Shown here in pieces: positions 5,890 through 46,000 of a DNA stretch of 64,000 nucleotides. The notes beneath the pieces were generated by a model, which worked only from the letters and a program-made list of their open reading frames with translations, searched no databases and was not told where the DNA came from. The position numbers were made by a program, and so were the translations under genes. Every line of letters starts with the position of its first letter. Within the stretch, counting starts at the first letter, position 1. This stretch comes from Lepidodermella squamata. Taxonomy: Eukaryota > Animalia > Gastrotricha. The stretch covers positions 1,364,001 through 1,428,000 of the forward strand of contig JBLDXI010000033.1 of NCBI GenBank assembly GCA_047495785.1, written 5' to 3'.

Positions 5890-6278
5890 GTTCCCCAGTT
5901 CTAATAAGTATCACAGATCACAGCAGCTTACAACTATTGGTGAACCTTGAATTTTGTCTGAATAAAAGATTCATGAATTTTCCAGTATAGGGCCGTTTTT
6001 CGAATGATCGTGCTGTTTTATTTGACCTTCAAATCGGTGGTTCAAAGCCCAGAATAACTGACCGGCAGGAGCTAGAGATTTTCATAAAAAGAAAAGATCC
6101 ACTGCATCATTGCCTAGTTTTCCTAGTCCTACTTATCATCGTATTTTACGGCGGTGCCGGGCCTTATTTACTGACCAACAAATTTCACAAAGGTTCTGTG
6201 GCAGTTCTGATAGCGGAGACGGCACTCGGACCTGTAATACGGAGCGTCCGGCCTGGGTTCTTTGAAGATATACGAAAA
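5890..6278 (+). pseudogene. Truncated, degraded copy of the 3' part of the 7TM receptor gene at 13465-14708
   Basis: Colinear similarity to ~14230-14620 including the second intron (cagcttacaactattgg..., ccgtttttcgaatgatc, ggtggttc.aagcc.agaataactga, ccgggccttatttactgacca.caaatttcacaaaggttctgt). No 5' exon and contains indels. Confidence 0.8.
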
Positions 6279-7434
6279 GCCTATAGGTGTACATAATTAT
6301 GTGGTACTACTTGAATTTAAACTATTTGTACATAATTTTCAAAATTGAACTTTGTTTCTACACGAACTTTTGGGCTTTTCCTGGTTAGGGTTACGGTTAC
6401 GGTTACGGCAATATCCGCGGCTCTATTATCGCACTTGAAACATAATTTGAAAGAAATAAAATACACTATAAGTAACACTTCCATACGCTTGCGTGTCTCA
6501 ACAATCCGTCGCAAATTATTTGACCAACTTTTTCCCCATCAATCACTGTGAAGCCGTGTATGATCTAGCAGCAGTTTTTTGTCTCATTTTTTGCCATTTT
6601 TTCATGTGCTTTTGCGTGTCCAACAGTCCGTCGCAAATTATTTGACCAAAGTTTTCCCCAACAATCCATGCGTAGCCGTTTATGCCCTAGCAGCAGCTTT
6701 CTGTCACATTTTTTGCCCTAGGGGGCTACGACCACTTATTTCACCACGCGTGAGCCAGGAAAAATATAAAATGTAACCCACTTCTTGTCGGTCAACAGCT
6801 ATATAAGTCGCCGGCAATCCACTGTCAAGCCAGCATCCTATTTTTCAGATCAAGCTTTATCATTAGTTTACGTTAAATTTTGCAATAGTAGCCCGGTCTT
6901 ATATAATTTAAATTCTCCGAAAATGGGCTAGTATTAGTGGTAAATGGTGCTTCAATCGAGTAAACAGGTTTTTAATCAAGTTTTATTGCGAATAGGCCTC
7001 TGTACAAGATGGGTTTTTAAAAATTTAAAAATTTTACTTTAATCCAAATTTAAAATTATAATTTACCTATTCGCCCAAAACTGGGTTTTCCGAGTTTTCT
7101 GGAATTTTGCGATTAATTAAAAAAAATTACGCTTAAATTATTTCGTGATTTTATTTACAAGGCATGGTCCTCACTTTCAGAACGCGACGCAGTTATTTTC
7201 TAAGAAATTATTCGAAAATATAGCACCTCTCATAAGTTTGCGTTTGTTGCAAGGTTTTGATATTTGGTTCCGCTATGTAGTCAATTCTGGTTCCGTAGAA
7301 AATGATCTTTAAAAAACCCAGAATTTACAGGCCAATTCTCCTTGACTCGACTCTAGTTACGTGGCAATTTGAAATACTTCACTTAGAATCTGATTTAAAG
7401 TACCTAACGAATAAATTAAAATTTCACAGCCACC

Positions 7435-16300: not shown

Positions 16301-18265
16301 ATGGGTCTCAATTTGTTACTAATATTTTTGGTACCGGCCTGTTTCGCCAACGAGGTAAGCAACCTTTACTCGAGGAAGTTTACCACTGGTTGCGATGCCA
16401 GCAATGAAGGGTGAGAATGGTTGCTGATTTTTTTTATTTTTTTTTAATTAATTTTTTTCAGCAATGTTTTCTATCTCACTTTTATGAGCAACATCCCGGA
16501 TCAGCCGAAGAATGTTCCCGTTGAAATTTTCGTGGCAACAGCCGCCGACAGCGCGTCCGTGACTCTTGAAACCGCAGCCGGCCGTGTCGATACGAAAACC
16601 GTTACCCGGGGCCAAATCGTCCGGTTCCAGGTCCCGCGTGAGGTTGCTGTTCTAACAGACACCGGCAAGTCGTCGCGAGCTCGCGTTGTCAAGGTCACCT
16701 CCGACCAAAAAATTGTAGTATACGGCGCCAATAAGGAGCACTACACCACCGATGCTTTCCTGGCCCTGCCTGAGACCGTCATTGGAACTCAGTACTACGC
16801 CGTCACGTGGTTCCCCCCGGTTAACTACGCCAAGCCCGATTACTGTGAAATCGCCATTGCCGCGGGCAAAGAGCAGGCTGTTGTTGAGATCACCCTGCCT
16901 CAAATCACCGGTGGCCAGTCAGGCGGTCGGGGATACCGCCCGGCTGATGCTGTCGCGACCTCGCCACTGCCCTTCATCCCACCAGAGCAGCCAGCTGTCC
17001 CGGCTCAGTTGCCGCCGCACGAACCCGAAACCCCGCTCGACTACCCACCACCTGGCGCGGATACCGTCCCATACCCGCACCGACCAGTTCCGGATAACGG
17101 CGGATATCCATTCAGCAACCAGCGCCTCGAGGATCCTCTGAACATCTACGCCGCTTATATGCCACCACCATACCCGGGCAATAACGAGGACACCGATGGC
17201 TACTACGTCCCAACGCCCATCCCTCACCCTGTTGATGCCGACCCTAGCGAAAGCATTGCTTGCAACGTCGAAATCGACGGCCGCGTGTACCGCAACGGCG
17301 ACACTATCACCGTGCAACTCCAGGCATTGGAAGCTCTTCAAATTCAGGCTAAATGCGATTTGACAGGTGCCTACATCAAGTCAACGCGTCCGATCGCCGT
17401 TTTCAGCGGAAACGCTCGTACCGCTATTGGCCCGGGCGCCATCACCCGTGATCATTTAGTCGAGCAGATCCCGCCAGTACCAACCTGGGGACGCACCTTC
17501 GTCACCCACCCAACCCCACGCCGCACTGTTGGTGATTACTTCAAGATCATCGCGGCTGAGGATGGTACTGAGATCACCGTCTCGCCGAGTGGTCGCCTCG
17601 TTAAGGCGGCTATCACCGACCGCCAGCAGCGCACGTTGAACGCTGGTCAACAATGGCAATTGGACGTTCCATCCCAGAGCTACCTCCACATTGTCGCGAC
17701 TAAGCCCATTTTGGTCGTGCAATTCGTGAAATCTCAGACAATTGGCACCGAACCAGCTGACCCGGCCATGAGCCTGGTTATGCCCATCGAGCAGTTCGGC
17801 CTCGGTTACACCTTCAACACCGTCGAGGGTGTCGCGACTACGTACCAAAATTTCATGACTGTTGCCGTTCATCGCGGTAAAGAGCACACCCTGGTGTTGG
17901 ACGGTGTCCCGGTTCAACCGGCTGAGGGTTGGTCCGAGGTGGCTGGTAGCAATGTGACGGTTGGCTACCTTAGCATCCACCCGGGTACGCACACCATTTC
18001 GAGCCAGAACGGTGACACCCGCTTTGCCACTTACATCTACGGTGCCGGCGATCGCGAGAGCTACGCATATCCTACCGGAATGTGCCTCAAGCTTTTGGTA
18101 AAATTTAATTTAATTTTTTAAAATTAAAAAAATTTTAAGGAGGGTTTTTTAGAATTTTCAAATTTTTCAATTAATTTTAATTAATTTAATTTTAATTTTT
18201 AGGAATGCCCGTCGACTCCTGGCTGCTGCTGCCAACGCTGCGAACGTGGCCTCGGTCTGTTCTGA
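16301..18265 (+). CDS. Secreted IgGFc-binding-protein N-terminal-domain protein, head 1 plus short Cys-rich tail
   Basis: Signal peptide MGLNLLLIFLVPACFA; exons 16301-16410, 16462-18097, 18203-18265. Motifs TDAFLALP, DLTGA.I.S..PIAVFSG, DHLVEQIPP..TWG, ADPAM, ESYAYP.G; Pro-rich insert; tail ECPSTPGCCCQRCERGLGLF*. Confidence 0.85.
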
Positions 18266-19126
18266 AAGCCTTATCGATACCTTTCGGCAATTCAGAGATG
18301 AGAAAAGAAAATGAAAAAAAAATCAGTGCTGTGAGATGATCAAAATCACCGTTTCGATCCTGTGCATTTCTTTATAATTTATTATTTTTCTAACCATAGC
18401 CTTGTATTTTTTGTCGAATATCGTGACCCTAGTTTTATTTACTATCGCGAATTTCTCACATTTTGCCGCAAAGTAAAAAAGGATGCTGCCACGTGATGGG
18501 TTCATTCTGATTCAACACTTAGCCATTTATTGTTATTTGCGGATATAAACCGCAGAATGTTTCAATCAGAGCATGACTGAGGCTTTGAGGCACGATTTTT
18601 CCCAGATGTGCACTCGTCTCCTGTTCCGGCTGGTTGATATAGCGTAAACACTGAGGCGTAGGCTTACCTAAATATTTTTCGTCATTCACGCCAAAAATTA
18701 TCATTTTTGCGCCACATACCTGCGATATATGAGGCCGGCTAATATATAATATGAAACACGGCCGCAGAATAAAAAAAAGTAAGCGTGGGAAAAACTACTC
18801 ATATCCTATATCTGGAGATGTCATGGCGGTAAATCGAGCAACCACCTTAATTTACAATTTCGGCTAATTTACCTGATGCTGATGGCAAAGTCCACCCGCG
18901 TCCGCTGTTGATTTTGTGCACACGCACTAATTTACATGTGTCAACACATCAACGACATCTTGTCACATCCGGTATATTGCACGTCAAATCTTAATGCAAC
19001 ACCGGAGACACATGAACTTCCTTAGCAACAGCTTGATTTGCGGTTCCGTTGCTAAGGACGCTAATTCTATTTTTTCAATTTTTTATTCCGAAATTCTCAA
19101 TTTTTCAGATTATTTTTGTATAATAA

Positions 19127-20634
19127 ATGTTGTTGGGCTTGTTAATCGCTTTTACCTGCTTTGGGAGGGCCGTTTTCAGCCAGCAAAGTCAGCCGAAAGC
19201 ACCCGAGCGTGACGATTGTAAGCAGTTGTCAAATTACGGCAATTCGTTTCATTTCACGGTTCTCGACACGGATGACGCTGTTAACCAGGCCATGGAACCG
19301 GCCCGACTCACCCTGGTACCAGCCCGGCAGACAGGTTCGACTCATCTGTCAATCAGAGCCGGGGCGTTTGCGCAAGATGGCGACTTTTCAAACTCGCCCG
19401 AACAGCAGGAAATACCGATGATGGCTCAAACCCGGCAACAGAGTGCAGTTGCGACCGGGCGATTCGAATTCGCAGTATGTAGCAAGTTCCAACAGGGTGC
19501 GACAGCCAATGCAACCGGAAAGGCTTGTATTGTCACGGAAAAGGCCGTCCGGGTCCAGACTAACCAGCCGGTAGCCGCTGCGGTGAGCCAGGGCGATGAG
19601 TCATACACTTTGATTCCTGATTCAGCGGCTGGGCAGGAATATATTGTGGCCGGTTGGTTCCCACCAACGAATCCATCGAATGCAATCAAGTCTGATTTTT
19701 TAATTTTCATTAATTTTTCAAAAATTTACTTATTTTCAGGCAAAATGTGTTGGCTATTGTGGCTATCATGGAAAATACAACAGTCACAATTTCTCTACCC
19801 TCCGACCCAACTTGGACGTGTCAAATCACATTCGGCACGGGTACTTATAGAGCCGGCGACAAATTTGACCTTGACCTAGAACGCGACAATAGCCTCATCG
19901 TGCAGGCTCAATGCGATTTGACCGGAGTTTTGGTCACCGCGACTCGGCCTTTCGCGGTTTTTTCGTCAATCAACCGCAACCAGGTTGGCTCGTCAACAGC
20001 CCGGTCTGTCATGCAGCTACCGCCTACGGCTGCCTGGGGCAAGCAACATGTAGCCTTCAAAACGCCTAGTTTGCCGAATTCGAACGAGCAGTTGGTTGAT
20101 ACTTGGAAAATTGTCGCTGGTTTAAACGATACTCAGGTCGTTCTATTTCATTCCGACACTCAGTCAAGCGAGACGCTGAACATAAAAGCGCGAAGTTGCT
20201 ACTCAATGTCGTTGAAAGAAGAAAAATGGGTTGAAATAACGTCCAATTACCCGGTTTTAGTTGTTCAAATCATCATGTCACGTGACGGAGCCACGCCGCA
20301 AGACGCCATTGTCCATACACCTGTCGAGCAATTTAAAACGCGAATGATGATGCCTCGTTATCTGTTATGGCCTCATAATTTGACGCTGGCAATCGTCCGG
20401 AAACAATCGCAAAGTTCGGCCCTGGCGATGAATGATGTCCCGTTAGCGATAGGCGAGTGGTCCCCTCAGCCTAATTTGGGCACCCAGGTGGCTGCTGTGC
20501 CCCTATCAACAGGGCTGGTATCGTCGTTTTTGAAGCTAAATTCACCGAGTGCCGCCTTTTCAGCCTACGTTGTAGAACGTTTCGATGGAAATAATGTTCG
20601 GATTTTTTCGGGCGGAACTTGCTACGACCAACTC
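19127..20634 (+). CDS. Divergent IgGFc-binding-domain head 2 (ends on a phase-0 donor; 3' partner exon not adjacent)
   Basis: Signal peptide MLLGLLIAFTCFGRAVFS; WFPP, QAQCDLTG.LV.ATRPFAVFS, QLPP..AWG, PVLVVQ. Intron at ~19690-19739; ends GTCYDQL|GTAAGT at 20635. Confidence 0.75.
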
Positions 20635-21420
20635 GTAAGTATTTATTAATAATTTATTTTCTAAATTTATCTGTTAATTTTGACTGGGTAACTTGTGCGC
20701 TCTATTTATTTTCTCGGCTTTTGAGACGTTTGAAGTTCCGACCGGAAACAGTCTCAAGAATGTGCGAGACATAGGGCTCGATGACCCAGTTTTTGTTATT
20801 GCGCGGGTCGATATTCGCCGAGTGGTATCTATAGATGAAAAGCGGTAAATAATGTGACTTGAGTCATCGGAACGATACAAAACCGATCGTTTTGTAGCGC
20901 GTGTTGGATGAGAAACCGAAACAAGAGGCGTGTTTGCTTAGCGCACTCGGCCGGCCACCTGCGCGCCTTGGCGCCGACGACGTCGTTCCAACGACGCGGC
21001 GAACATATTTACCCGGCATAGCTAGACGCTAATAACAACAATGACAATAAGACCAACGGCAAACACGGCGAAAATAGCGCGTTAAATTAATCAATGCTTT
21101 ATACTATACGACGACGGTGATGACTGTTATTTACTCGGTAATTAATAACCGCAACAGATAAGTGTAGTAGTACGACCACACCCTCTCGAGCCAACTACCT
21201 ACCTGGTTGGCGACAGCGCGCGGGAAACAACTTTCATTTCACCATTTCCCATATCGCAATAAAACTTGTTTATTAGCTTTTTGTTCCGCGCCGCAAAATC
21301 ATTGTTTTTTCTCCACAAAAATCAAGAGCCGTAAATAAACGTTGTTAGCAAACAACAACAACACCAAAACCCGGCCTCCAATCTGTTTCATCTCATTTAT
21401 TATCCATTAATGTAGCGAAA

Positions 21421-22986
21421 ATGAGACACCTATACGTATCCACCTTAATTATTTTAAAAATCGCGCTAATTAACCCAAGTCGCGCAACTACAACGGGTTG
21501 CGAAATCAGCAATGAGGGGTATGGTTATAATTATGATTTTTGATAACCGATAAATTAATCAAAAATTAGCAACGAGTACTACTTGACATTCATGACAAAT
21601 TTCGCGCAACAACCGCATAATGTCCCGATCGAAATTTTTGTCACCACCTTCGCTGATATGGCCACCGTTACGGTAGAATCGCTAGCTGGGATCGAACGAA
21701 AAACAGTCTCCCACAACGCAATCATAACGTTTCAGCTACCAAGGCAATACGTGGTGCTTCATAATACCGGGAAAACGTCTCGAGGCCGGGCGGTTCGCAT
21801 TACTTCTGACCAGAAAATCGTCGTTTATGGCGCGAATAAGGAGACATATACTACGGACGCGTTTCTCGCCTTACCTGGAAACGCGATTGGTCAGCAGTAT
21901 TACGCAATTTCTTGGTTCCCGCCGACCTATTTCTGCGAACTAGCCATCGCGGCGACGAGTAATAAAACTCAGGTCGAGATCACCCTGCCTAAAGAATCGC
22001 AACAAGCTGCTCCGAAATCGACTCTCGTCCCGAAACGAGCTGTGAACCAGAGGCAAATGCGTATTTTGAAAAATTTGACTGGCATCGATCCGGATCAACT
22101 AATCGATGACCCTGAGAGCCAGTTCTACGTACCACAGCCGGACAATATACCAGCTCCCTATATACCATGTGAGGTCGAGCATGACGGTCGGGTGTATCGC
22201 AGTGGAGACACCCTGTTGGTGACGATGAATGAAATGGACGCTTTGCAAGTTCAGGCGAAATGCGACCTGACCGGCACGTTGATTAAGGCGGATAAGCCGA
22301 TTTCAGTCTTCAGCGGTAACGACCGAACAGCGATTGGCCCGGGTGCAATCACGCGTGACCATCTAGTCGAGCAGCTGCCACCAATCAGCGCTTGGGGTCG
22401 TAATTTCGTAACAACGCCCATCCCACGTCGGACAATTGGCGACTATTGGAAATTGATTGCGGCTGAAAACGACACGACTGTCACGGTATCTGGGCTGAAT
22501 GTCGATGAGGATAGCCGTGTTTTGGCAGCTGGCCAAAATTGGCTACTCGATTTAGGATCCTCGTCCCACGCGTTCATCTCAGCCTCTAAGCCAATCATGG
22601 TCGCTCAATTCGTGAAGAGCCAACAGGAGGGCAGTGAAGACGCCGACCCAGCTATGTTGATCGCAAACCCCCTGGAACAGTTCGGTCTCGGCTACACGTT
22701 TTCGACTGTTGAAGGCGTTGCGAATCCTTACAAAATCAATTTCATGATGATTGCGGTGGAAAAGGGCAAGGAGTCTGATTTGCTGCTCGACGGCGCTAGG
22801 TTCGAGCCGGCCGAGTCGTGGACTGAAGTTCCATTGTCTAATGTAACGGCTGGTTACATCGTCCTGGAGCCGGGTACTCACACGATCGGGAGCCAAAATG
22901 GAAACGCGCATTTTGCGACCTACATTTACGGGGCGGGAGATCGCGAGAGCTATGCGTACCCTACAGGAACTTGCCAACATGTCCTC
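21421..22986 (+). CDS. IgGFc-binding-domain head 3
   Basis: Signal-peptide exon 21421-21518, intron to 21569, long exon ending ESYAYPTGTCQHVL|GTAAGT (donor 22987, phase 0). Clearly paralogous to head 1. Confidence 0.85.
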
Positions 22987-23264
22987 GTAAGTATTATTAA
23001 ACGCACAAGTTACCCAGTTGGTTATTTAATTACTTAATTAATTACACGTAAAAAGCGTTGGACGTCCTTTAAAATCGAAAGTTCTCGAGTTTTTTTTGCA
23101 CGATTTTTTTTCGAGTTGAGTTTTGTGCTACTCAAGTTGAGGCTGACGAAAGATCTTTCATTTTGGAGGGCGTCCTCGCTTGTAATGTGGAAATGCCCTC
23201 TAAAGTGCGGATTTTTCCGAAGCTAAAACTGTGCTTTTTTCATCAACCTCCTTAAAAATTGAAG

Positions 23265-25611
23265 AATTGCCTGCCGAGTTTTATGGAACCGCTCGACGGC
23301 AGAGACAACGACTGTGATGGCAGCATCGATGAGGAAATTTGCGATGATAAGGACGATGATGGCGATGGCCTGATCGATGAAGACTGCGGTGCTGCAACGC
23401 CTATCCAAGGGCCGTCAAAAATAGGTAAATGACAAAATTTCGAATTTTTTAATCTTAAATTCGAAATTTCAAGAAATGCGAAGAACTGTTGGCTGCTACA
23501 ACAAAAGAGCTGAGCTCTCCTGCCCAGCCGGGAAAACCATTAAGATAATTTCAGCCCATTATGGTCGGATAGGCTTTGTTGGCGATAATACTTGCCAAAT
23601 CGGTAACACATTCGATTTCAACGGCTTCGAGGTCGACTGCGGATTCAAAGACATTCACTCGAATGTCGCAAGCCAGTGTGACAAACAGCCCAATTGCGCC
23701 GTTACGGTCAACGAGCACGGCCTCGGAAGTGTTTGCAACTCTGGGCCATGCAAGCCATGCAGCCTTTACGCCGATATTCAATACACATGTCTTGGTATGA
23801 AATAATTCTTTATTATAGTCGAAATTATTTGAAATTTTCACGCTCAGATGAACCGCGTTGGAGCTGCTGGCACCCTACTAGTCGAATCTCCTCCACAACC
23901 CCCGAGCATTGGTCTGCGAGCTCAACTGAGAAGAGACCTAGGAGTGAGCAGGGCTGTCTCAGTGGTCGGAACAAGGCCTTCAATAACTCACCATTTGAGC
24001 CGAGAAAATCCGGATGCGAAACGTGTCTTCCTACAACAAATCGGTTATCGACAGCCGCACCATCAGAAGCTTTCTCAGGCCGGCTCGGCGCGTCGAATCT
24101 TGAGTCATGGTGCCCGGCGTTTTGCGACAAAACTCTCCCGTTCCTTCAGGTCGATCTCGGTGGTGATTTTCTCGTAGTCGGATTTTTGATCCAGGGCCAG
24201 CGTTATCTTGACAACTTCGCGACAAGTGTCGCAATTTCCTACAGCCACGACGGCCGTAGCTGGTACGAACTCCGCGAACCAGCCCAGGCGTTGGTCTTCA
24301 AATTCGACGCGAATAACGACCCTAGGACGATTACCGGCTTTCATTTGAATAGCTTGAGCTTCATTGCGAGATATGTCCGCTTTGTTGCGTTGGACAGCGT
24401 TGGGTCACCCTGCATGCACGTCGAGGTCATCCGGTGCAACGAGCGTGTCGAATGTGGGCCGTTGCAAATCGCCAATTCAGACGCGTTGAACAAAGCTGGG
24501 CAGATAGATCAAATCCTTCGCGTTAGCTGTTTGTCAAATTTCGAAACGCCCGATGGCTTGAAGGCGTTTGAGGTCATCTGCGAGCGGGCCGAGGGCGGCG
24601 CCGGGTTGCCGGTCTGGGGTGGTAAACGCGAGTGTTCGGTCGCTAAATCTTGCGCATTCATCCCGGCCGTTCAAGATGCGCTTCATGACGCGGTGAATGT
24701 CAAACTTGGAACGAAGGTCAATTACACGTGTAATCCTGGGTTCACCCGATTTGGGCCGGAAACTGTAACGTGTGGCCCGGATGGACATTGGTCTCAAATC
24801 CCGTTCTGTGAGTTACTAATTTAATTCAAAAACTTCTTGAAATTCAATTTTTTTTTTATATTTTTATTTTAAATTTAAATTTAAATTTAAAATGTTCAAG
24901 ATTTCAAAAAATGGTTCAATTCATTTGTTAAAATTCCAGGCTGTAATCAATCTGAGCAGATACAAGGCCGCTGTTATAAGCTGTCGAAGATTCAACTTCC
25001 TTACGATGAAGCCGTTATCGAGTGTAAAATGCGGGGTGGCCAACTTGCTGAACCCACCGACCCAGCCGCGCTTTCTCAACTAGCCTCGCTCATTCGCCCG
25101 AGACGCGATATTGGCAACCGGCCTGTTTGGCTCGGTTTCACCGATCGATTCAGCGAGGGCCGATTCGTTTTCGAATCTTCCCAAATGGAAGCCACTCTGC
25201 CTTTCGCTGGAGGGTTCGCTAAACTTGAAATATTTCAAATAGAAACACCACCTTAAATATTACTATTTTTGCGATTTTTTAAGGTCACCTTCAAGCTCGG
25301 GCTATGAAAATTGTCTCACTCTTGAGTCGCGATCAAGCTTCACTCTGGCTGATTCAAGTTGCTCGAATTCGCTCTATTTTTTCTGTAGCTACAGCACTGA
25401 ACCAGCTGAAGAATTCTCGAACTTTGGCCGAGTTCCCGATCGCGATCCAACTGAATCATCAGGCTCAGGAGCCGAACAGCCTCAATCTACCTCATCTACC
25501 TCAGAAACGACCCAACCGGCCGAAACGACAACCGAAATTCAGCCGCCGACTTCGCGTTCAATTGCTGAATTTCTCGCTGATTTCGCGACAGCGATGGCTC
25601 GACGTCATTGA
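23265..25611 (+). CDS. Tail module A: DGxDNDCDGxIDE repeats, SUEL/rhamnose-type lectin, F5/8 type C (discoidin), CCP/sushi, C-type lectin, Ser/Thr-rich end
   Basis: Exons 23265-23424, 23474-23794, 23848-24807, 24940-25213, 25284-25611 join in frame at GT-AG sites. Motifs LSCP...I.I.SAHYGR, SWCP...LQVDL, ARYVR, CNPGF..G...C...G.WS, CY...A...C..GGQLA...VWLG.TD...EG.F. Confidence 0.8.
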
Positions 25612-26041
25612 AAATTGCCAGAGAAATACGAAAAATAATTACCTTGAACTAGTTTGCTGTCTATGCTTCTTTTTATCCTAAAAATACGATCTTCCTATAT
25701 AGGTATACATAGAGTCGAATAATTCTTCCTCTATTTCGACATCTCAGCATTCTTCCTATAGTTGAATACAGCTTCCGCAAAATTCCACCCCCTAATTTTT
25801 GATGACAATCATTTTACTCGTGAGTATCGTGCATTTTTTGTTGGTTTTCTATTCAGTATTTGCAATGTCTTGAAATAAAAATTTGAAAATATCGCAGCAA
25901 TAAAACGCAGAAAAATTTAATAATAATACGCGTTGTAAAGGACGTCCAACATATACCTATATAAATATAATTAAATTAACCAAATGAGTACTTTGTGAGT
26001 AAAAATTGAAATAATTGCATATATATATATTTTTAATTTAG

Positions 26042-28456
26042 AATTGCCAACCGGGCTTCATGATTCCAAACGACGGCAAAGACAACGACTGTGACGGTCG
26101 AATCGACGAGGAAATCTGCGGCGATGGATTGGGTAAGGCTATAAAAATTCGATAAAACCATTTTTCAAAATTGCTAATCTTAGACAATGATGGCGATGGG
26201 AAAATTGACGAAGACTGTGGAAGCACCTTCCAACCATCGACCGAGAAAAGATATGTCCTGCCCCGAATTCAAATCTGCTTCGGCGACCGGGCTGTTCTCG
26301 CATGCAACGCCTCGGCTGGGCAACGAATCCGTATTGTCCAGGCTCATTTCGGCCGAGCCGGTTATCCAGGTGAAGACTCATGCCGATCCGCCAACCCGAT
26401 TTCATGCTCAGGCGAAGAAGCTGACTGCGGCTGGCGAACGGTTCGCGATCACATCGGAACGATTTGCAACACTCGGGAAAAGTGCGAGCTTAAAGTCGAC
26501 TCAGCTTTCGTCTCAGCCTGCCCCCTCGACGCGACGTGCCCGCTCTGCGCTCAATACCTCGAAGTCATCTACATGTGCTCTACCGAACCAGCCGATTGCC
26601 AATACCTGGCGACCGATGCTGAATTTTCGTTCTCAGACGGCTACTACGGCGTTGAGGGTGGTAACGCTGGGGAGCTTTCGAGCTGCGCCTCAGCTCGAGA
26701 GTTCGATCAACTTGACAGTAACGCTATTCAATATTCAATGCTGCGCCGCGAACAGCCGACATGTGATGGCGGGTGTATCCAGAAGCAAGTTGGCGCGTCT
26801 CAAAAATTGGGCGAGAAAGTTTGCGCGGCTTCTTCGGCTTGCATGGACATGGATGGGTTGCCGAGTTGGTGCCCGGAACGGTGCCAACTAGCCCGACCTT
26901 ACCTCCAAATTGACTTGAAAGGTAAAATGACCTAACGTCAATTGAAGCCTTGAGAATTTAATCTCAAATTTAAATTTATTTTCCTAATTTTAATTTTTAA
27001 TAATTTTTAATCAATTTTTCAATTTATAATTATTGATAATTAATTTTTTAAGCTTCGAGCTTAAAAATCGAGGCCAAGATGAAATGCCTGGACGGCGTGA
27101 TCGTTCCAACCGTGATGTTCGGGTCCGAAGGATGGGCGATGACTCGTGAAGAAGAAAGAAGGCTAGATGTCTGCCAGATGAAATGGCTCAGGAACATTAC
27201 CGGAATTAGGCTGGCTGATAGGGTCCGAAATGAAACAATTAGAAAAAAATGTAATACGCAAAAATTATCAACAAAGGTCGCTAGGAATCAATTAAGATGG
27301 TACGGACACGTAGAACGCAGAGACTCGGAATCGCTATTGAAGCAGGTTAGGTATTGGGACCCCCCGGACGATTCGTGGCAAAGACCCCAGGGCCGTCCCA
27401 AACTGCGCTACTCAGACTGCATGAGAAGGCAGTTGAAGAAAATTAATATTGAGAATTGGGAGGACGCCGCTGTATTAGCTCAGAATAGAATTGAGTGGCG
27501 TACGAAATTGAAAAATATCACAGATTGATTTTTGAATAATGAATTCATTTCGCTCATTTTTCAAACAAAAATATCGAATTTTTCATCATTTTCAATACAC
27601 TTTGATTTTGGCTTGACTTAGGATCGACTAACGTTGGTCCTCCTCCGACACTCGGTATGGTTGGAGGAACACCATCATCCTTCAGCCATACCGGGTACAC
27701 CGGAGTGAATTTTATTTCGTTATGTGTACAGGTTTCCTTTTTTGTCTTTTTGCTCTAAACGAAATAAAGAAGATGTAATGTAATGTAATTTTTTAATTAT
27801 TCAATTTTAATTTATTTTCAGGAAAGTTCCGGATTAAAGCCGTAATTATGCAAGGTCGCCGAAACTGGGACCACTGGGTGACCTCAGTGACCTTCGCCTA
27901 TAGCTCCGACGGGGTTCAATGGACGGATAAGCTTGACCCCTACGGCGTAATCCAGGAGTACAAGGCCAACGAAAACCCATTCGACGCTGTTGTGTGGGCT
28001 TTCAACAACGGCGAATTCGAAGCTCGGTACCTTCGAGTGAATGTTCGAGAATGGTACGGCTACCCTGCGTTGAACCTTGAGGTAGTTCGATGCGCGGCAG
28101 CGCTCAGCTGTCCCGCGATTTCGGTCATGAATTCGAACATCCAAAGCGAGCCGGCTCTTTTCGGCCAGCAATTGGAGGTTCAATGCAACCGGCTATGGAT
28201 GACACCTAGTGGCGAGATTTCCTACAAACTAACGTGCCGGACGGATGGGGCGTGGGACTGCGGGGCTAGGCCATGTTCGGAATTGCGAACTTGCGGCGAT
28301 ATTCCAGCTGTGACCGGGGCGTTGCATAATGCGAGAAATATGCTTGTCGGATCGCTGGTAAGCTACGTTTGCCAGGGTGGTCGCCAAATTCAGGGCAACG
28401 CTACCGTCATCTGTCAGCCGAGTCGCGAATGGTCAGCTCCACCTAAATGTGTCTAA
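26042..28456 (+). CDS. Tail module B: DGxDNDCDGxIDE repeats, SUEL lectin, F5/8 type C, CCP/sushi; no start or signal exon of its own
   Basis: Begins ttttag|AAT TGC (phase 0, like module A); exons 26042-26132, 26184-26921, 27822-28456. No upstream coding exon seen between 25611 and 26041. Confidence 0.8.
27052..27785 (+). mobile_element. 5'-truncated non-LTR retrotransposon (RTE-like) in an intron of module B
   Basis: ORF 27079-27528 matches the post-RT C-terminus of RTE-type LINEs (P..MFGSE.W, LR.I.G....D.V.NE.IR, LRWYGHVER, RP.GRP..R..D, A..R..WR). (TGTAA)n tail; 11-bp direct repeat TAATTTTTTAA at 27041-27051 and 27786-27796. Confidence 0.9.
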
Positions 28457-29095
28457 AAATCGAATCTCAAAAACAATTATTACTCCAAGCATGGATAAAT
28501 AGTAAATTAATTGAAATTTGGTGAATTAATAAACAAAATTGTAAAGGAACGAGGTGATGAAACTCGAAATCCATTTTATAAACTAATTATACATGTGCTT
28601 TTATGAAATTTATCATCATAAAAACCTATTATTTTTCTGCTCACTGTTGTTATGATGGAAAATCATTCCATTAATTATCGTGCCTCTAGCAATTCTGATT
28701 GTACATAGCAAAAATTTATTGCGGGTAATAAAAATCGAATCGAGTAATTAGCGTTAATATTCAAGACAATTTCGGTCAATAACAAGATAATAACATTGAT
28801 AGTTTTTTGATGAGGTCAAAAGCGCACTAGAAGATGCAAGTGCGCTTGTAAACAATGCGGCCTTAAATGCCCGATAATCCGCAGCCATTTCCTTCACTCA
28901 TCCCCTCGAGCTAGGTGCCTAAACGTTTGTTGATATTATTTATGACACTTGGTTTTGCGCTTTATACGTGTGCTTTATACGTCTAAATTATACAAATATT
29001 TGCGAAAATTAACAGATTTTTATATTAGAGCAATATACAATAGCTGTTGTTTTTTACAAGTGATTACCTCTTCACGGTGTTATAACACAAAGGAA

Positions 29096-35462: not shown

Positions 35463-37795
35463 ATGGAAACGAGAACTCGATCTGCAGCCAGAAAAGCTGC
35501 AGCTTCTGATGCTCCGAAACCAGCCGAAGATCAAACTCCAGTTTCGAAGCGGCGAAATCAGCCGAAAAATGACACCGAAAAAACTGCGGAAAATGCTGGA
35601 TTTTTCTTCCGATTGTACAAATACCTGCTCGAGCCGATTTTAACGATGACTGTCATGCCGATTATTTTACTTTTCATCGTCTATTACAATCTCCACACGC
35701 CGATTGAAGAAGGCCGCGGCGAAGCTGCCCTAGAAAATTTGCCGCAATTTTTCAGAATTAAATTTCGCGGCAAATGGCAGCTGCTAGCTGCTGAATTGGC
35801 CTGGAAATTTGTCCCGACTTTGTTTGGCTTATTGACGGTTACAGGATTCATCTTATTCGAGGTAATTTCTATAAAAATTCAAGATAAAATCTAAAGCTGA
35901 TTTATTCAGGTAATTTTATCCAGATTTTTACCTGGTCGATCTGTGCCTGGCACCCCTTCACCAAAAGGCTATGTTCCTACCTACAAGATTAATGGATTTT
36001 TAACCTTCCTGGTTACCATGTCAACCATAGCCGGGATAGCCTACTACGCCAAACAAAAATACAACTCATTCATGATTCTAACTGTCGTCATCCACCGATA
36101 TGACGAGGTCATCGGCTCTGCTAATGCCGTCGCCATAGTTTGGTGCATTTATTTGTACCTGAAAGCTAAATTCGCCCCAAATAGCGACTGCTACGACACT
36201 GGCCGGCCGCTTTTCGACTTCATCTGGGGCGTCGAGTTGTTCCCGACATTTCTCGGCGTAGATCTGAAGTGGCTGTTGAACGGCAGAATTGGCATGATGT
36301 GCTGGCCTGTTGTCGTCTCGCTGTGCTGGCTGGCGAATTTTGAATTCTACGGATTTCAACCAGCGATTTTCATCGCTAGTGTTCTTCAAATCGCCTATGC
36401 AGCCAAGTTTTTCATCTGGGAGGAGAATTTCATCCACGGCGTTGATAATGTGTACGATCGAGGCGGTTATTACATTACGTGGGGTTGCACCTTCTTCATG
36501 CCCGCCATGCACACCCTACCCAGCCAGTACCTCGCTTTCCGCATCGGCCCGCAATGGAGCGTGACTGAAACTGCGATGTTGACCCTGATCGGGATGTTTT
36601 TCATCGTCACGCAACGGCTGGCCGAGGCTGATAAAGTCCTGGCTCGTAAAACGAAGGGCGAGAAGTCGGTTTTGGGCTTCAAGCCAACGGTTATCAGGGC
36701 GAAATACCAGCGCGATCATGATGGCGAAATGGTCGAAAGTATTCTGCTGGTGAGTGGATTTTGGCGGATCTGCCGGCACTACGGATACCTGGCTGAGTTG
36801 GTCATGGCTTCTTGCTGGTGTTTGGCGTGCGGTTTCGGCTCAGCTTTGCCCTATTTCTACATGATTTTCTTGATTCTTCTATTCGTTTTCAGTAAGTTGA
36901 ACCTTTTGAAATTGTGAAAATTGAGGTTCATATTGACAGTACGCGGGGTACTCGTGGACAGGTTGAAGTTTGACACGGGCATTCCTTTTTGCAACGGAAG
37001 CAAAAGCGAAAATCGGAGGGGCCATACACCAAATTTCAGGGGCGAAATCGGGAATTTGCGACCTTAATAAATAGTTGCATTTTTAGTGATTTTTTGCATT
37101 TTTATTGCATCTTTTGAAAAATTACAGGTCTTAATTTTGTTATGAATAGGGTCAATAGCAAATCTGAAAGCTGACAAGGCAATTTTATTTGCTAATGAGC
37201 GTTCAAAAGTACCTGCTCAAAACTGTAAAACTGCGTTTTCAAACAATTTTTAAATAGCAAAAAATCAGGTAAACTGTGTCGACAAAATTTGATCAATCAG
37301 AAATCATTTTCCCCGCCTTGACGAAAATCATCTGAATAAATGCTGATTTTTATTCCTTGAGAAAATAAAATGTGTTCAAATTTACCTTATTTTGGACAAA
37401 ACCATGTTTTTCGGGTCTAGAAAATCTGGAAAAAATTATTAAAATTAGCCGAAATTTTCGGAGCATGATGGAGTGCCGACTTCCTATTGCTGTGAAAATT
37501 TCTAGAATTTTACCATTTTTCTTTGATTTTATAAAAATATTTGAAAGTAATCGGGTTGACATGGGGGTCCTAAAATGACACTTCGAGGGCAACTACTTGA
37601 CCAGCATTACTGTATTATACATGTGTGACTTTCACGAAAAAGTGAATCGTAGGTACCTATGATGAAATTGTAATTTTCCGTTTGCTTTTTTCAGGAGCTA
37701 TCAAGGACGATGTCCGATGTGCGAAAAAGTACGGAGATAGTTGGCAAGAATACGTTCAACAAGTTCCCTACCGCATTATACCATTTGTGTTCTGA
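35463..37795 (+). CDS. DHCR7-like: ERG4/ERG24-family sterol reductase, divergent DHCR7/DWF5-like paralog
   Basis: LPG...P...GY.P.YK.NG, DF.WGVELFP, NGRIGMM.W, DRGGYYITWG, LLVSGFW..CRH..YL.E, PYFY, R...DD.RC..KYG..W..Y...VPYRIIP. Introns 35862-35909 and 36892-37694. Confidence 0.85.
36937..37612. mobile_element. Degraded TIR element in sterol reductase intron, related to the 2091-3704 element
   Basis: 37387-37540 is similar to 2103-2251; ends CAGTAC...TGGACA and ...CAGCATTACTG|TA resemble degenerate TIRs. Confidence 0.5.
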
Positions 37796-40320: not shown

Positions 40321-42035
40321 ATGGCTACTCGGCGAGCCAATAAATCTGAGAGTGAAACGATGACCACCGAACATCGCAATGGAAATGGGGACGTTTCTAA
40401 GCATAATGGCAGTAACGGCAGCTTACCAAAGAAGTCTCACTACAACCTTTACTACTCGAATTTCGGCCCGCTCTACTCGTTTTTCCACTTCACCGTCGCG
40501 CCCCTGGCTCTCATGGCCCTGATGCCGTTTGTCATCATGTTCCTAGCCCTGATTAATCTGCACCAAGAAGACGCGAGTTTGATGGCGATTCCGAATTTTA
40601 TCGAAAAATGCGGCGGTTTCCCTGGCGTTATGAGCCTATTGTGGTCGAAAATGATGCCGACCCCCTTCGCACTCGCTGTCGTCCTCGGATTTCTGGCTTT
40701 CGAAATCGTGCTTATGAAGGTCGTACCTGGCAAACCAACCTTTGGCTTACCTACAGCAACTGGCCATATTCCGGAGTATAAAGATAACGGAATGGCGTGC
40801 TACTTGATTTCAATGGCTGCAACTGGCGCGATTACCTACTACCTGAAAGCCTATACAAACATGACACCGACTGTCGTTATCGATCGATACGACGAAATTT
40901 TAGCAGCTTGCAATGTTGTCGCACTGCTTTTGTGCGCCTTCCTTCACTTCAAGGGCCGCCACTTCCCGTCGACTAAGGACAACGAGTTGTCTGGCCACCC
41001 TGTCTTCGACTACTACTGGGGCTCTGAACTATTCCCCCGCGTGTTTGGTATTGATATCAAAGTTTTGACTAACTGCCGATTTGGTATGACAATGTGGCCG
41101 ATCATCGTCATGCTGTGTTGGTTGAAGAACTACGAGCTGTACGGCTTCCGAGCTGGCATTGCTGTTTCTTCCGTTTCTCAAATGCTGTACTTGACCAAGT
41201 TTTTCACATGGGAAGCCGGCTACATGAAGACGATGGATATTATGGTCGACCGCGCGGGTTACTACATTTGCTGGGGCTGTCTGTGCTATTTGCCTGGCCT
41301 GTACACCTTCCCGAGCCGGTTTTTCGCCTCGCGTCACGGTGTTGATTTGCCTAATTGGGCGGCGATCTGCCTCGTTCTGCTCGCTGTTATTTGCATTGTG
41401 CTACAACAGCTCGCCGAGCATGAAAAGTCGGTCGTTCGTGCGACGAATGGCGAAAAGGGCCTGTTTGGCGGCAAGCCACGAATTATCCGCGCCAAATATC
41501 ACTTGACTGACGGCCGAGAGGTATATGTTTACCCATTTATTTTTCCTTCTTTTTGAAAAAAATAAGAATAATTTTGAATTTTGAAATGAACTTAAAATCC
41601 AAATTTTAATTTTAATTTTTCAATTTTTTAATAAATTTTTTAATAAATTGAAAAAATAGTAAATAATTCTTTTATTCAATTTTAATTCAATTTTTAATAT
41701 TTTCTGATTGATTTCAGATGGAGAGCATTCTCCTCACATCTGGATTCTGGGGCATCAGTCGCCACTTTTGCTACCTTCCTGAGCTTCTCATGACCTTCAC
41801 CTGGAGCACAGCCGAAGGATTCCGGTCTGCCTTGCCATACTTCTACTTCTACTTCTTGGTTATTTTGTTGGCCAATCGTACCTACCGCGACGACAGGAAA
41901 TGCGCTCATAAGTAAATCGATTGTAATTTTATTAAAATTTTGATTATATCGAAATCATTTTTGTTCAGATACGGTGAGTATTGGACGAAATATATGCAAA
42001 TGGTCCCGTACCGCGTTTGTCCCTTTGTTTGGTAA
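40321..42035 (+). CDS. DHCR7: 7-dehydrocholesterol (sterol delta-7) reductase, DWF5-type
   Basis: YYWGSELFPR, DIKVLTNCRFGM, TKFF.WEAGY..TMDI..DRAGYYICWGCL, LLTSGFWG.SRHF.Y.PE, RDDRKC..KYG.YW..Y...VPYR. Introns 41521-41717 and ~41912-41968. Confidence 0.9.
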
Positions 42036-43013: not shown

Positions 43014-46000
43014 TCAACTAAAATTAACAGGTCGATTCGGCGCGACAGGTGTTAAATCGATAAAGGTGATGCGTTCGCTTGAGGTAGTTGAGGCCTGTTG
43101 TTGTTGCTGTTGTAGGTGATTGATTTGCGAATTCGGAAGCTGTGCGTTAGAACTGCTAGGCGACATTGCTGCGTTTTGCGCTGAAACCGGCGAGACACTC
43201 GCTGTTATGCTGCCGTTGCTGGGTGTTGTTGCGGCAAGTGGCGCCAGGCAGGGTGACCGGTCGGTGCTGGGATGAAGCGTCGTTTGAGAATTTTGACCTC
43301 TAACCTGAGCACCGCCGTTTCCATTCATTTTTTCGTCACATATTGCTGTTCGGGGGAAAAAACAGGAAACTGGTTAATAAATTTCTGGCAGGTGTAAAAA
43401 AAATGTGTCACATTAGGTTTGTTAACAGCGGAACCTATTTCGGATGTTCTTATAATGAGCGAGAGAAAGAAGTTTAAAATCGGACTTTAATTAGCTTTGC
43501 GCTTACACGATTTTTCCCGAATAATCCAGAATTTCAGGATTGCACAGAAAAAATACGGAAATTATTAATGCATGCAATTTTCATAATTTTTGAACATTGT
43601 TAATATTTTTCAAGCTGAATTCAGGTCTAGGGCCAAGAGGAACAGGATATAAATTACTTTCCGTAATAAAAAATGACGATGTCATATTATTTTTCGTCAT
43701 CAATGCCTTGTGGACTTATGGGAGGATCAAGATGAGACTGGCAGCTAGGTCGCAGATAGTCGAAGTTACAAAAAATTCAGCCATATTTTTCTTTTTCAAT
43801 TTCCCAAGTGGATCAATAAAATATCGAAAAAAATTGGTAATTTTATCCAATTAAATTCGGGTAATATTTGAAAGTCTAGCAGTGGTTGCGTAACGAGATT
43901 CTGAAAATATGATTCACGGCTAAACAAAATTGAAAAAAATAACTGAATTTGAACCTTCAAGAGGGAAATGAGAGAATTTGTTGTAATTTTCTTGAAATTT
44001 CTAGCGATTGAACTAAAATGAAATTTCAAACTCATTAACGGCTTCAATAGAATGGTTCTATGTCAATTGAGCAAACGAAATTAGAGCAAAACGACTTTTG
44101 AGCAAAACGAGATTAGAGCAAAACGACACGAGAGCAAATTTAATAATTAATTGCAGCTGTTGTTTATTTTAAATAAAATTTGCTCTCGTGTCGTTTTGCT
44201 CTAATCTCGTTTTGCTCAAAAGTCGTTTTGCTCTAATTTCGTTTGCTCAGAAGTCGTTTTGCTCTAATTTCGTTTGCTCTAATATCGTTGCTCAAAAGCC
44301 CTTGCTCTATTTTCGTTGCTCAATTTTCGTTTGCTCAATTGACATAGAACCAATAGAATTTAGCCTCTTGACAATTTTTTTTAATATAAATTCACCTTTA
44401 TTACTATCCCTCATGCTGTTGATGGAAGCCTCGCTTTGATGACCCGAATTAACGGCAATATTTAGAGATTTTCGCAAGACTGAAGGCGAATTAGCACTGC
44501 TAATGAAAGACGATTTACGAGCCGGGTCCTTGCCCCCACTATTTAACCCGCTACTCAGAGAGCCAGCCGCATTCTGAGTGCCAAGATCCGACGACTTCGA
44601 AAACGATCGATTCGCCACAACTGCCGAGGGCGGTGAACTTGACCGTTCTTTACACGAGAAATTTTTCGGCCGAACCGGCGTCGACTGGCCTGTTTTATTG
44701 CCAGGCGAGCTAGCACCTGCGATTGACTTGGAATAATTCCCGTTAAGCAGATTCGCCGCGCTACCGTTATAATTAGCGTTGTAATTCTGCTTTGTTTCAA
44801 AAATTCGTTTCGCCATAGTTTCCTTCATCGCCAACTGCTCTTTAATCGTCGCCTGCTGGATCCGATGATGCTGTTGAAGAATGGCCTGCTGCTGCTGTTC
44901 CTCTCGCGTTTTCAACCCGTAGGTTGTGATGAGGCCTTTAGGAATGTTGACATCGCCAAGTAAAAGAGCCCGTTGTAGCGCTTCTTTGCGCTTGATGGCT
45001 TTTTCTCGGCGCATTTGGTCCTTGTAGTACTCGGCGAAATTGTTAACGATGATAGGAATGGGAAGAGCTATCACAAGCACACCGCAGACGCAGCACGCCG
45101 CTCCAACCACTTTGCCAACAGCCGTATGTGGGTACTATAAAAAAGAGGAAATTTTCAAGGATTTTTAGCATGAATTTCGAAAAATCAACCTTAATTGAAA
45201 AAATATTATTATACAAAAAATTTAAAAAAATTTAAAAAAATTATTAAAATTTTTTAAAATATCCATCTTACCATATCGCCATATCCTACTGTAGTCATTG
45301 TAATGGCAGCCCACCAGAAGGCAGCAGGAATGCTGGTGAATTTTGTGCCTTCCATGTCCTTCTCGACGAAATAGCACAAACCGGAGAAAATTAGAATGCC
45401 GATGAAGAGGAACATGATGAGAAGGCCCAGCTCTTTGTAAGACCGCTGTAGGGTGTAGCCTAGTGATTGAAGGCCCGTCGAGTGGCGGGCTAATTTCAGG
45501 ATTCGAAGTATTCGCAAAACTCGCATGATTTGCACGATTCGCCGCACGTCTTCGAATGTCGCCGTTCCGGTTGACCCGGCAGCCGTTTCAACCACGATCA
45601 GAGAGACGTAGTAGGGCAAGACTGAAACAATGAATACACTTGTTACTCTTTTTAATTCTGATATTAATGATAAGCAATACACTGATGATATAATTCCAAA
45701 AATTTACAACAATTATTGAAATAAATCCTATATCGGAAAAATCGCTGATTCGGAAAATCGATGTTTGAAATCGATATCGGTTTTCGAACCCTAAATTTGA
45801 CTAAGCATCAACTCCTAAATTGTATTATTATCAAAAAATGAATTTTCAAATCCTTACTTGCTAACAAATCGATGATGTTGAGAGCGCCTCTCAAAAATTT
45901 GAGCTTGCTCGGCGAGGCCCATAGCCGGCCAATATATTCGAACGTGAACCAGCCAATGCAAACAGCTTCAATGAGCGCGATAACAGGATTATCGTGATCA

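What the first reader, a model, noticed from the sequence alone, without database searches (positions are those of the whole stretch)
23001..26000. ~70-nt duplex brackets tail module A, competes for the same docking site and leaves a ~55-nt effective intron
Seen: 23057-23071 (GTTGGACGTCCTTTA) is the exact reverse complement of 25936-25950. 23001-23032 pairs with 25968-26000 (about 27 of 32 identities to the reverse complement, one gap), in colinear antiparallel order. The duplex starts 14 nt after donor 3 and ends 41 nt before acceptor B, so about 55 unpaired nt remain, which is the typical intron size in this window. Its outer part overlaps the site used by selector 1. Inference: competing pairings decide 3->A, 3->B, 2->A or 2->B. 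Selector 1 and the 23057/25936 helix could also coexist and bring donor 2 near acceptor B. Alternative reading: decayed TIRs of a transposon that captured module A; I saw no TSD.
Basis: partly seen in the sequence, partly recalled or inferred. Interest (0 to 1): 0.87.

Follow-up and report, generated by a model that had tools for sequence, protein, structure and literature searches.

The report
Intron pairing hub linking alternative gene modules
Short complementary stretches in three introns of a modular secreted-lectin gene could fold the pre-mRNA so that a "head" with no tail of its own reaches a distant "tail"; a related species has an equivalent link built from unrelated sequence, so the pairing is probably functional, but no splice junction has been seen.

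Summary
23057-23071 is the exact reverse complement of 25936-25950. 23001-32 pairs with 25968-26000 at 27 of 32 identities. 14 + 41 nt stay unpaired. With local folding allowed, the intron after head 3 ("d3") and the stretch before tail B ("preB") gain -28.5 kcal/mol, against -6.4±2.3 for shuffles (0/50).

The arms are unique in the window and match no Rfam family, and I saw no target-site duplication. The locus is three IgGFc-binding heads (H1-H3) and two paralogous lectin/discoidin/sushi tails (A, B), all phase 0. H2 has no tail of its own and B has no head.

A relative (56-70% aa identity, L001) has the same H2-H3-A-B order. It carries an unrelated perfect 20-nt complementarity, 54 nt after donor 2 and 84 nt before acceptor B.

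In the window, the element after donor 2 (20680-99) and preB share the docking site. Folded together, the 17-mer and the inner helix coexist (P=0.96 each) and join donor 2 to acceptor B. The intron's own hairpin also competes for the inner arm.

RNA-like contigs cover H2, A and B but hardly H3. No junction contig was found.

Verdict: probably a docking/selector splice-steering system, a new member of a known kind.

The parts
20635..20640 (+). Donor 2: GTAAGT right after the last codon of head 2 (phase 0). Head 2 has no tail exon of its own.
   Evidence: Sequence. The ORF frame ends at 20634. The donor is conserved in L001 at 1586. RNA-like contigs cover 20400-20634.
20680..20699 (+). Selector 1: a 17/17 Watson-Crick complement of 23002-23018, or 20 bp with three G-U pairs. 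It lies 48 nt after donor 2 (45 nt counting the G-U pairs).
   Evidence: Cofold gain is -24.0 kcal/mol against -7.8 +/- 3.4 for shuffles (0/50). No dinucleotide shuffle of the locus reached 17 nt (0/200). Relative strain X2 has G>A at 20699 with no compensating change.
22987..22992 (+). Donor 3: GTAAGT after head 3 (phase 0). It starts the 278-nt intron 22987-23264.
23001..23032 (+). Docking site (hub). Its proximal half pairs with selector 1. The whole of it pairs with 25968-26000.
   Evidence: X2 shows no listed differences at 23001-23074.
23057..23077 (+). Inner arm. It holds the palindromic core GGACGTCC. It pairs with 25929-25950 (15 exact, 20 pairs in the cofold) or with the local partner 23145-23182.
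23145..23182 (+). Partner of the inner arm inside the same intron. Together they form a hairpin (-39.9 kcal/mol as a duplex) that compacts the head 3 to tail A intron.
   Evidence: The intron's fold has z = -3.66, and 1 of 200 shuffles folds as well. Helix map. All four X2 substitutions in this intron fall on unpaired positions.
23263..23264 (+). Acceptor A (AG). The tail A exon starts at 23265 in phase 0 (MopE-like Cys motif, SUEL lectin, discoidin, sushi).
   Evidence: Direct repeat D3 with the start of tail B. Orthologous to L001 3937.
25608..25610 (+). Stop codon of tail A. AATAAA signals follow at 25874 and 25899, so the pre-B arms lie just past the likely cleavage site.
   Evidence: The C-terminus and an AATAAA 35-45 nt before the pairing site are likewise present in L001.
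25929..25950 (+). Pre-B inner arm, complement of 23057-23077.
25968..26000 (+). Pre-B outer arm, complement of 23001-23032 (27/32, one gap). It has the same sense as selector 1 and is partly similar to it.
   Evidence: In X2, 9 nt within 25981-25993 are missing.
26040..26041 (+). Acceptor B (AG). The tail B exon starts at 26042 in phase 0. Tail B has no head or start exon of its own.
   Evidence: RNA-like contigs cover 26042-26390 and show the GT..AG joint 26131->26183. Orthologous to L001 6373.

Best explanation
The arms are cis-acting RNA elements of the docking-site/selector kind. They steer long-range splicing in a two-sided modular locus.

Layout. Heads H2 and H3 each have their own start codon, and H2's opens a signal peptide. 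Each ends in a phase-0 donor. Tails A and B each begin with a phase-0 acceptor, and A has its own stop and poly(A) signals. H3-A is a compact unit nested between the orphan head H2 and the orphan tail B. B can therefore be used only if a donor reaches across tail A, and H2 only if its donor reaches across H3.

The hub. The element right behind donor 3 (23001-23077) acts as a hub.
1. In transcripts started at H2, selector 1 (20680-20699) pairs with 23002-23021 as soon as that site is made. This loops out H3 and puts donor 2 about 250 nt from acceptor A.
2. Once the pre-B stretch is made, the inner helix (23057-23077 with 25929-25950) and the distal outer helix also loop out tail A. This three-way junction brings donor 2 to acceptor B.
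3. In transcripts started at H3, selector 1 is probably absent. The full two-helix duplex then leaves 14 + 41 nt between donor 3 and acceptor B.
4. A hairpin inside the H3-A intron (23052-23092 with 23145-23182) competes for the inner arm and favours the default H3->A or H2->A splice.

What is shown: the sequences, their positions, their predicted energies against shuffles, and an analogous link in a relative. What is inferred: that the helices form in vivo and change splice choice.
For: - Exact complementarities of 17 and 15 nt, both unique in the window.
- Energy gains with local structure allowed are far beyond shuffles: -28.5 against -6.4 +/- 2.3, and -24.0 against -7.8 +/- 3.4, each 0/50.
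- In a three-segment fold the 17-mer and the inner 15-mer coexist, each at mean pair probability 0.96.
- The two longest exact inverted matches in the 10.4-kb locus both join splice-adjacent intron stretches.
- The orthologous locus L001 (collinear H2-H3-A-B) has as its single longest inverted match a perfect 20-mer. It lies 54 nt after donor 2 and 84 nt before acceptor B. No shuffle reached 20 nt (0/200), and the cofold gain is -26.5 (0/50).
- The introns of the two species share no detectable sequence, so the link was kept or re-made rather than inherited as sequence.
- In three assemblies of that relative, 11 variants lie in the 261-nt pre-B stretch and none within 6249-6293, which holds the site.
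- RNA-like contigs cover the end of H2, tail A and tail B, but H3 almost not at all. The tails in that sample therefore need a distant head.
- The geometry matches proven systems. sDscam selectors lie 43 +/- 10 nt after the donor (PMC9258826). In PGRP-LC, pairing within an intron competes with pairing between introns at tandem 3' cassettes (PMC6191721).
Against: - No splice junction joining any head to any tail was recovered.
- Only one related species is available, so there is no base-by-base covariation.
- The helix wiring differs between the two species, and the relative's pairing between its head-3 intron and pre-B stretch is not significant (10/50).
- The outer pre-B arm has lost 9 nt, and selector 1 has a terminal G>A, in a strain about 2-3% diverged.
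- Inverted matches of 15 nt or more are not rare in this window.
- The energy models ignore kilobase loops, proteins and co-transcriptional order.
- The local hairpin (-39.9 kcal/mol) forms first and may hold the inner arm.
Confidence: 0.55

Rival explanations
1. Neutral by-product. Small inverted duplications or template-switch events in AT-rich introns left complementary patches. These have no effect on splicing and are decaying.
For: Several other inverted pairs of 15-74 nt occur elsewhere in the window. 8% of locus shuffles reach 15 nt. The outer arm is only 27/32 and has a 9-nt deletion in a near relative. No junction reads were found.
Against: All three top-ranked pairs in the two species join stretches within about 15-90 nt of exactly the donors and acceptors that must find each other. 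My rough arithmetic: such zones make up about 5% of the locus, or about 13% of its non-coding part. The cores are perfect while the flanks share nothing. The relative's site is an invariant island in a polymorphic intron.
Confidence: 0.25
2. The arms are decayed terminal inverted repeats of a transposon, or two opposite copies of a miniature element, flanking tail A.
For: An inverted pair about 75-87 nt long brackets a 2.9-kb segment. A retroelement-like ORF lies in a nearby tail B intron (27079-27528).
Against: The arms are unique in the 64-kb window. X2's contigs (records 11 and 16) pass through both arms unbroken at ordinary depth, so a high-copy repeat is unlikely. No direct repeat flanks 23001 and 26000. 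Tail A sits at the same place in a species with unrelated introns, so it was not carried in by an element. There was no Rfam or tRNA-like hit.
Confidence: 0.05
3. The pairing is functional but acts mainly on 3'-end formation. By sequestering the region just downstream of tail A's AATAAA, it would suppress cleavage there and allow read-through to tail B, rather than bringing splice sites together.
For: In both species the pre-B site starts about 30-45 nt after an AATAAA that follows tail A's stop.
Against: The space between the poly(A) signal and acceptor B is only about 140 nt in both species, so this position is nearly forced. The real cleavage site is unknown, and RNA-like contigs give no cover at 25600-25999. 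This reading does not explain the 17-mer between the introns after donor 2 and donor 3.
Confidence: 0.1

Closest known systems
Competing RNA pairings at tandem multi-exon 3' cassettes: Drosophila PGRP-LC, CG42235, Pip (Pan et al. 2018, PMC6191721)
   Same: Tandemly duplicated multi-exon 3' cassettes, each with its own end. An intronic docking site is complementary to similar selector sequences. Pairing inside an intron competes with pairing between introns. Pairing brings a distal acceptor close to the donor.
   Different: Here the 5' side is also modular, with heads that have their own start codons. The docking site sits 14 nt behind a donor rather than at an intron-exon boundary. One element serves both an upstream and a downstream partner. 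The gene family and the animal lineage differ. Nothing here has been tested by mutation.
sDscam-beta 5' variable cassettes of the mite Tetranychus urticae (Hou et al. 2022, PMC9258826)
   Same: Alternative 5' cassettes driven by their own promoters. Selectors lie 43 +/- 10 nt after each cassette's donor and pair with a docking site upstream of the shared acceptor, shortening the effective intron to about 120 nt. The relative L001 matches this layout: 54 nt after donor 2 and 84 nt before acceptor B, so 138 nt in effect.
   Different: There is one constant region there, and two alternative tails here. In the window species the link runs through a relay site in a third intron. Trans-splicing was not examined here.
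Dscam1 exon 6 and 14-3-3xi docking site/selector mutually exclusive splicing (Graveley 2005 and Yang et al. 2011, as cited in PMC6191721)
   Same: One docking site, several mutually exclusive complementary selectors, and choice by competition.
   Different: Those choose single internal exons within one transcript. Here whole multi-exon modules and a nested gene unit are looped out.
Origin model for competing structures by tandem duplication of one stem arm (Ivanov and Pervouchine 2018, PMC6071210)
   Same: In L001 the sites after donor 2 and donor 3 have the same sense and resemble each other, as expected if a selector was copied together with the head.
   Different: In the window the two sites after the donors are complementary to each other, which that model does not produce directly.

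Membership tests
Docking-site/selector competing RNA pairing system | Tandemly duplicated, interchangeable cassettes with compatible reading phase | tested here: met
   Heads H1-H3 all carry PF17517. Tails A and B share the same domain order. All head donors and tail acceptors are phase 0.
Docking-site/selector competing RNA pairing system | One intronic docking site complementary to two or more selectors, with footprints that overlap so that the pairings exclude each other | tested here: met
   23001-23032 pairs with 20680-20699 and with 25968-26000. The footprints overlap at 23001-23021. In the three-segment fold the upstream selector displaces the proximal half of the outer helix. All of this is in silico.
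Docking-site/selector competing RNA pairing system | Elements lie in introns within tens of nucleotides of the splice sites to be joined | tested here: met
   In the window: 48 nt after donor 2, 14 nt after donor 3 and 41 nt before acceptor B. In L001: 54 nt after donor 2 and 84 nt before acceptor B.
Docking-site/selector competing RNA pairing system | Pairing conserved or covarying across species | tested here: inconclusive
   One related species has a strong but non-homologous link between the donor 2 intron and the pre-B stretch. Its own head-3 intron to pre-B pairing is not significant. A near strain lacks 9 nt of the outer arm. There are too few species for covariation.
Docking-site/selector competing RNA pairing system | The alternative junctions exist in RNA | tested here: inconclusive
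   RNA-like contigs show H2, A and B expressed and H3 nearly silent, but no contig crosses a head-tail junction.
Docking-site/selector competing RNA pairing system | Disruptive and compensatory mutations shift splice choice | not testable with these tools
   Needs minigenes or genome editing.
Transposon with terminal inverted repeats (MITE or foldback type) | Many copies in the genome | tested here: not met
   The arms are unique in the 64-kb window. The relative strain's DNA contigs (X2) run through the arms at ordinary depth. The rest of the genome could not be searched.
Transposon with terminal inverted repeats (MITE or foldback type) | Target-site duplication flanking the arms | tested here: not met
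   The flanks end in ...ATTATTAA on the left of 23001 and begin AAAAATTG... on the right of 26000. They form no direct repeat.

The most novel reading that the evidence does not exclude
A two-sided combinatorial locus (heads with their own promoters, tails with their own ends) uses a single relay element in a third intron. This element assembles a three-way RNA junction that splices an orphan head to an orphan tail across a complete nested gene unit. Between species the wiring was rebuilt from unrelated sequence: a direct link in the relative and a relay in this species. This would be docking/selector control outside arthropods and vertebrates, caught in evolutionary turnover.
Probability: 0.3. 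Interest if true: 0.75.

Novelty: new member of a known kind. Interest (0 to 1): 0.6.

Why it matters
Proven cases of long-range RNA pairing that choose among duplicated gene modules come mostly from arthropods, such as Dscam1, PGRP-LC and sDscam. This locus would add three things. It is a case in an unsampled small invertebrate whose best named matches are spiralians. It lies in a secreted lectin-like, possibly recognition-type, gene family. Its geometry is unusual, with a complete head-tail unit nested between an orphan head and an orphan tail.

The two species solve the same topological problem with unrelated helices. That makes the locus a natural test of how such RNA "wiring" arises and is replaced. 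The test is direct: junction counts, then compensatory mutations.

Tried and rejected
- RNAduplex on whole introns forces a global duplex and was uninformative for selector 1. I replaced it with cofolding that allows local structure.
- Two scripts timed out and gave nothing.
- Reverse-complement similarity beyond the core, over about 230 nt, looked possible but is not significant (61/500). A long ancient inverted duplication is therefore not supported.
- The relative's pairing between its head-3 intron and pre-B stretch looked promising in the alignment (z = 3.3) but failed the cofold control (10/50).
- Search for more orthologous loci. The word-index search with H3 found only one related species. 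The exhaustive HMMER search with H2 found no annotated or transcript-derived full-length kin. The JGI metagenome scan gave only distant heads at 27-46% identity. L008 and L009 are the same species as L001, about 99% identical.
- Rfam and tRNA scans of 18000-29000 were empty.
- A paper search for the metagenome sample codes found nothing relevant.
- Pfam did not confirm my impression of a C-type lectin module at the end of tail A.
- Taxon. A DHCR7-like ORF matches named spiralians at only 40-45% identity. Other agents' 'rotifer' guess was not tested.
Full report
**1. The locus**

The window is eukaryotic, with short introns. One 51-nt GT..AG intron (26132-26182) is confirmed by an RNA-like contig.

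Three paralogous "heads" lie on the + strand, each with an IgGFc-binding domain (PF17517):
- H1 is 16484-18097.
- H2 starts at the ATG at 19127, which opens a signal peptide, and ends at 20634.
- H3 starts at the ATG at 21423, has a short intron, and ends at 22986.

Each head ends in phase 0 at a GTAAGT or GTAAAA donor.

Two paralogous "tails" follow, A from 23265 and B from 26042. Both start in phase 0 with the same Cys-rich DNDCDG motif, followed by a SUEL lectin, a discoidin and sushi domains. Tail A ends with a stop at 25608-25610, followed by AATAAA at 25874 and 25899.

H1 has its own short terminal exon after a 106-nt intron. H2 has no tail next to it, and B has no head or start exon. 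Some long-range splicing is therefore required by the anatomy itself.

**2. The observation**

- 23057-23071 and 25936-25950 are exact reverse complements, and the match extends to 17/18.
- 23001-23032 and 25968-26000 match at 27/32 with one gap, collinear and antiparallel with the inner helix.
- The intron starts at 22987 and exon B at 26042, so 14 + 41 nt are left unpaired.
- The upstream "selector 1" (20683-20699) is a perfect 17-mer complement of 23002-23018. Three G-U pairs make it 20 bp. It therefore overlaps the outer helix's footprint.

Statistics:
- The core alignment scores 73, against 26.9 +/- 4.7 for shuffles (0/500). The outer part alone gives 0/500. Beyond 22993-23079 and 25930-26007 nothing is significant.
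Shuffled partners gain -6.4 +/- 2.3 (0/50).
- The dimer with the intron after donor 2 gains -24.0, against -7.8 +/- 3.4 (0/50).

Caveats:
- An isolated 15-mer occurs in 8% of locus shuffles, although a 17-mer occurs in none of 200.
- The real window has other inverted pairs of 15 nt or more.

**3.

The H3-A intron is 278 nt, about five times the usual size, and folds on itself more strongly than chance (z = -3.66; 1 of 200 shuffles folds as well). Its main hairpin pairs the inner arm region 23052-23092 with 23145-23182 (-39.9 kcal/mol as a duplex).

The core GGACGTCC is a palindrome, so several partners are possible. This is a competitor inside the intron, of the kind described for PGRP-LC. 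It would compact the intron for the default splice to A.

The four substitutions that a strain about 2-3% diverged (run X2) shows in this intron all fall on unpaired positions of this fold.

**4. Comparative evidence**

Protein searches found a single related species in ENA metagenome assemblies. It appears as three contigs, L001, L008 and L009, which are about 99% identical to each other.

L001 is collinear with window 19325-28486, exon by exon: H2, H3, A, B at 56-70% amino-acid identity. In that species H1 is a separate gene that simply ends in a stop (L002). On L008 a neurotransmitter-gated channel (Neur_chan_LBD) gene lies directly upstream of H2, and on L002 such a gene follows H1.

The introns of the two species share no detectable sequence. 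Even so, the longest exact inverted match in the whole L001 contig is a perfect 20-mer. One arm is at 1640-1659, 54 nt after donor 2. The other is at 6269-6288, 84 nt before acceptor B and 35-45 nt after tail A's AATAAA. With extensions it makes 30 pairs (-44 kcal/mol). Its cofold gain is -26.5, against -6.6 +/- 3.6 for shuffles (0/50).

Among the three assemblies, the 261-nt pre-B stretch carries 11 variants, and none lies within 6249-6293, which holds the site. That is suggestive only; I estimate a chance of about 0.15.

The same pre-B site also partly matches a stretch about 50 nt after donor 3, but this fails the cofold control (10/50).

The robust feature shared by the two species is therefore a strong link that connects the orphan head H2 to the orphan tail B across the nested H3-A unit.

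**5. How the window's three sites work together**

I folded the three intron segments as one chain, joined by neutral linkers.
- The 17-mer between the donor 2 intron and the docking site has mean pair probability 0.96.
- The inner 15-mer between the H3 intron and pre-B also has 0.96, so the two coexist.
- Selector 1 displaces only the proximal half of the outer helix.
- The distal AU-rich half (23020-23032 with 25968-25981) stays paired.

Without selector 1, as expected for transcripts that start at the H3 promoter, the full two-helix duplex forms and leaves the 55-nt "effective intron" between donor 3 and acceptor B.

Order of synthesis matters. Selector 1 and the docking site exist about 2.9 kb before pre-B is made, so H2->A can win kinetically and B needs the later helices. 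All of this is inference from thermodynamic models that ignore kilobase loops and proteins.

**6. RNA data**

One run (X1) behaves like RNA of the same species. It covers exons only, and 48 of its 61 contigs are at least 99% identical to the window. It has a GT..AG joint at 26131->26183. It covers the end of H2, tail A and the start of tail B, and shows almost nothing on H3.

This implies that the tails in that sample are joined to a head other than H3, which fits long-range splicing from H2. The contigs are only 65-150 nt long, and none crosses a head-tail junction. The key prediction therefore remains untested.

Run X2 is DNA of a near relative.
- It shows no listed change at 23001-23074.
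- It has a terminal G>A in selector 1 (20699).
- It has lost 9 nt inside the outer pre-B arm (25981-25993).
- The state of 25933-25950 was not listed.

The outer helix is thus the least constrained part.

**7. Alternatives**

*Transposon repeats.* This is unlikely, for five reasons:
- The arms are unique in the window.
- X2's contigs run through both arms at ordinary depth.
- No target-site duplication is visible.
- No Rfam or tRNA-like hit was found.
- Tail A sits at the same place in a species with unrelated introns.

*Neutral inverted micro-duplications.* This remains the main rival, because inverted pairs are not rare here. It does not explain why the top pairs in both species join exactly the splice-adjacent stretches that have to meet.

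*Masking of tail A's poly(A) region.* This is possible as an added effect, but the position is nearly forced by the roughly 140-nt spacing.

**8. Comparison with known systems**

The layout matches docking-site/selector systems.
- PGRP-LC, CG42235 and Pip have tandem 3' cassettes with competing pairings (PMC6191721).
- Mite sDscam-beta has promoter-driven 5' cassettes, selectors 43 +/- 10 nt after the donor, and an effective intron of about 120 nt (PMC9258826).
- An origin of selectors by duplication has been proposed (PMC6071210).

The membership features that can be tested in silico are met. Conservation and RNA junctions are inconclusive, and mutational proof is out of reach here.

I class this as a new member of a known kind. 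Its distinctive points are that it is two-sided, that it uses a relay hub, and that the wiring has turned over between species.

**9. Taxon**

A DHCR7-like ORF in the window matches named nemertean, mollusc, flatworm, brachiopod and annelid proteins at 40-45% identity. No close annotated kin exist. Other agents of this scan guess a rotifer, which I did not test.

One overlapping follow-up report exists and was withheld.

Noticed in passing
window 18098-18266; L002 6330-6400: H1 has its own 106-nt intron and a short Cys-rich terminal exon (18204-18266). In the related species, H1 has no donor at that point and simply runs into a stop. There it is a separate gene from H2, with a Neur_chan_LBD gene between them. 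H1 is therefore probably not part of the head-by-tail system.
   Followed up: partly
window 26930-27820 (ORF 27079-27528): A tail B intron of about 890 nt holds a 149-aa ORF. From memory it looks like the C-terminal part of a non-LTR retrotransposon protein, but Pfam gave no hit. The orthologous place in L001 has no such insertion.
   Followed up: partly
window 18154-18167 and 25877-25890: A 14-nt exact inverted match joins H1's short intron and the pre-B stretch. It is almost pure A/T (GC 0.07) and within what shuffles give, so it is probably chance.
   Followed up: no
window 44053-44352: A hairpin-like repeat with perfect 74-nt arms (44068-44141 and 44176-44249) plus nested shorter copies.
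   Followed up: no
window 59339-59410 and 60125-60235: Three inverted matches of 19-22 nt about 0.8 kb apart. They could be terminal repeats of a small element or another long-range RNA duplex.
   Followed up: no
window 2263-2280/3663-3680 and 54968-54984/55328-55344: Two further exact inverted matches of 18 and 17 nt with ordinary base composition. The second lies near the guanylate-cyclase-domain ORF 53489-54499.
   Followed up: no
window 35943-36917 and 40321-41556: Two tandem ORFs of the ERG4/ERG24 family. The second, which I searched, finds 7-dehydrocholesterol-reductase-like proteins, with best named matches in spiralian animals at 40-45% identity.
   Followed up: partly
L001 3738-3761: A (GT)n microsatellite in the relative's H3-A intron supplies part of its weak match to the pre-B docking site.
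   Followed up: partly
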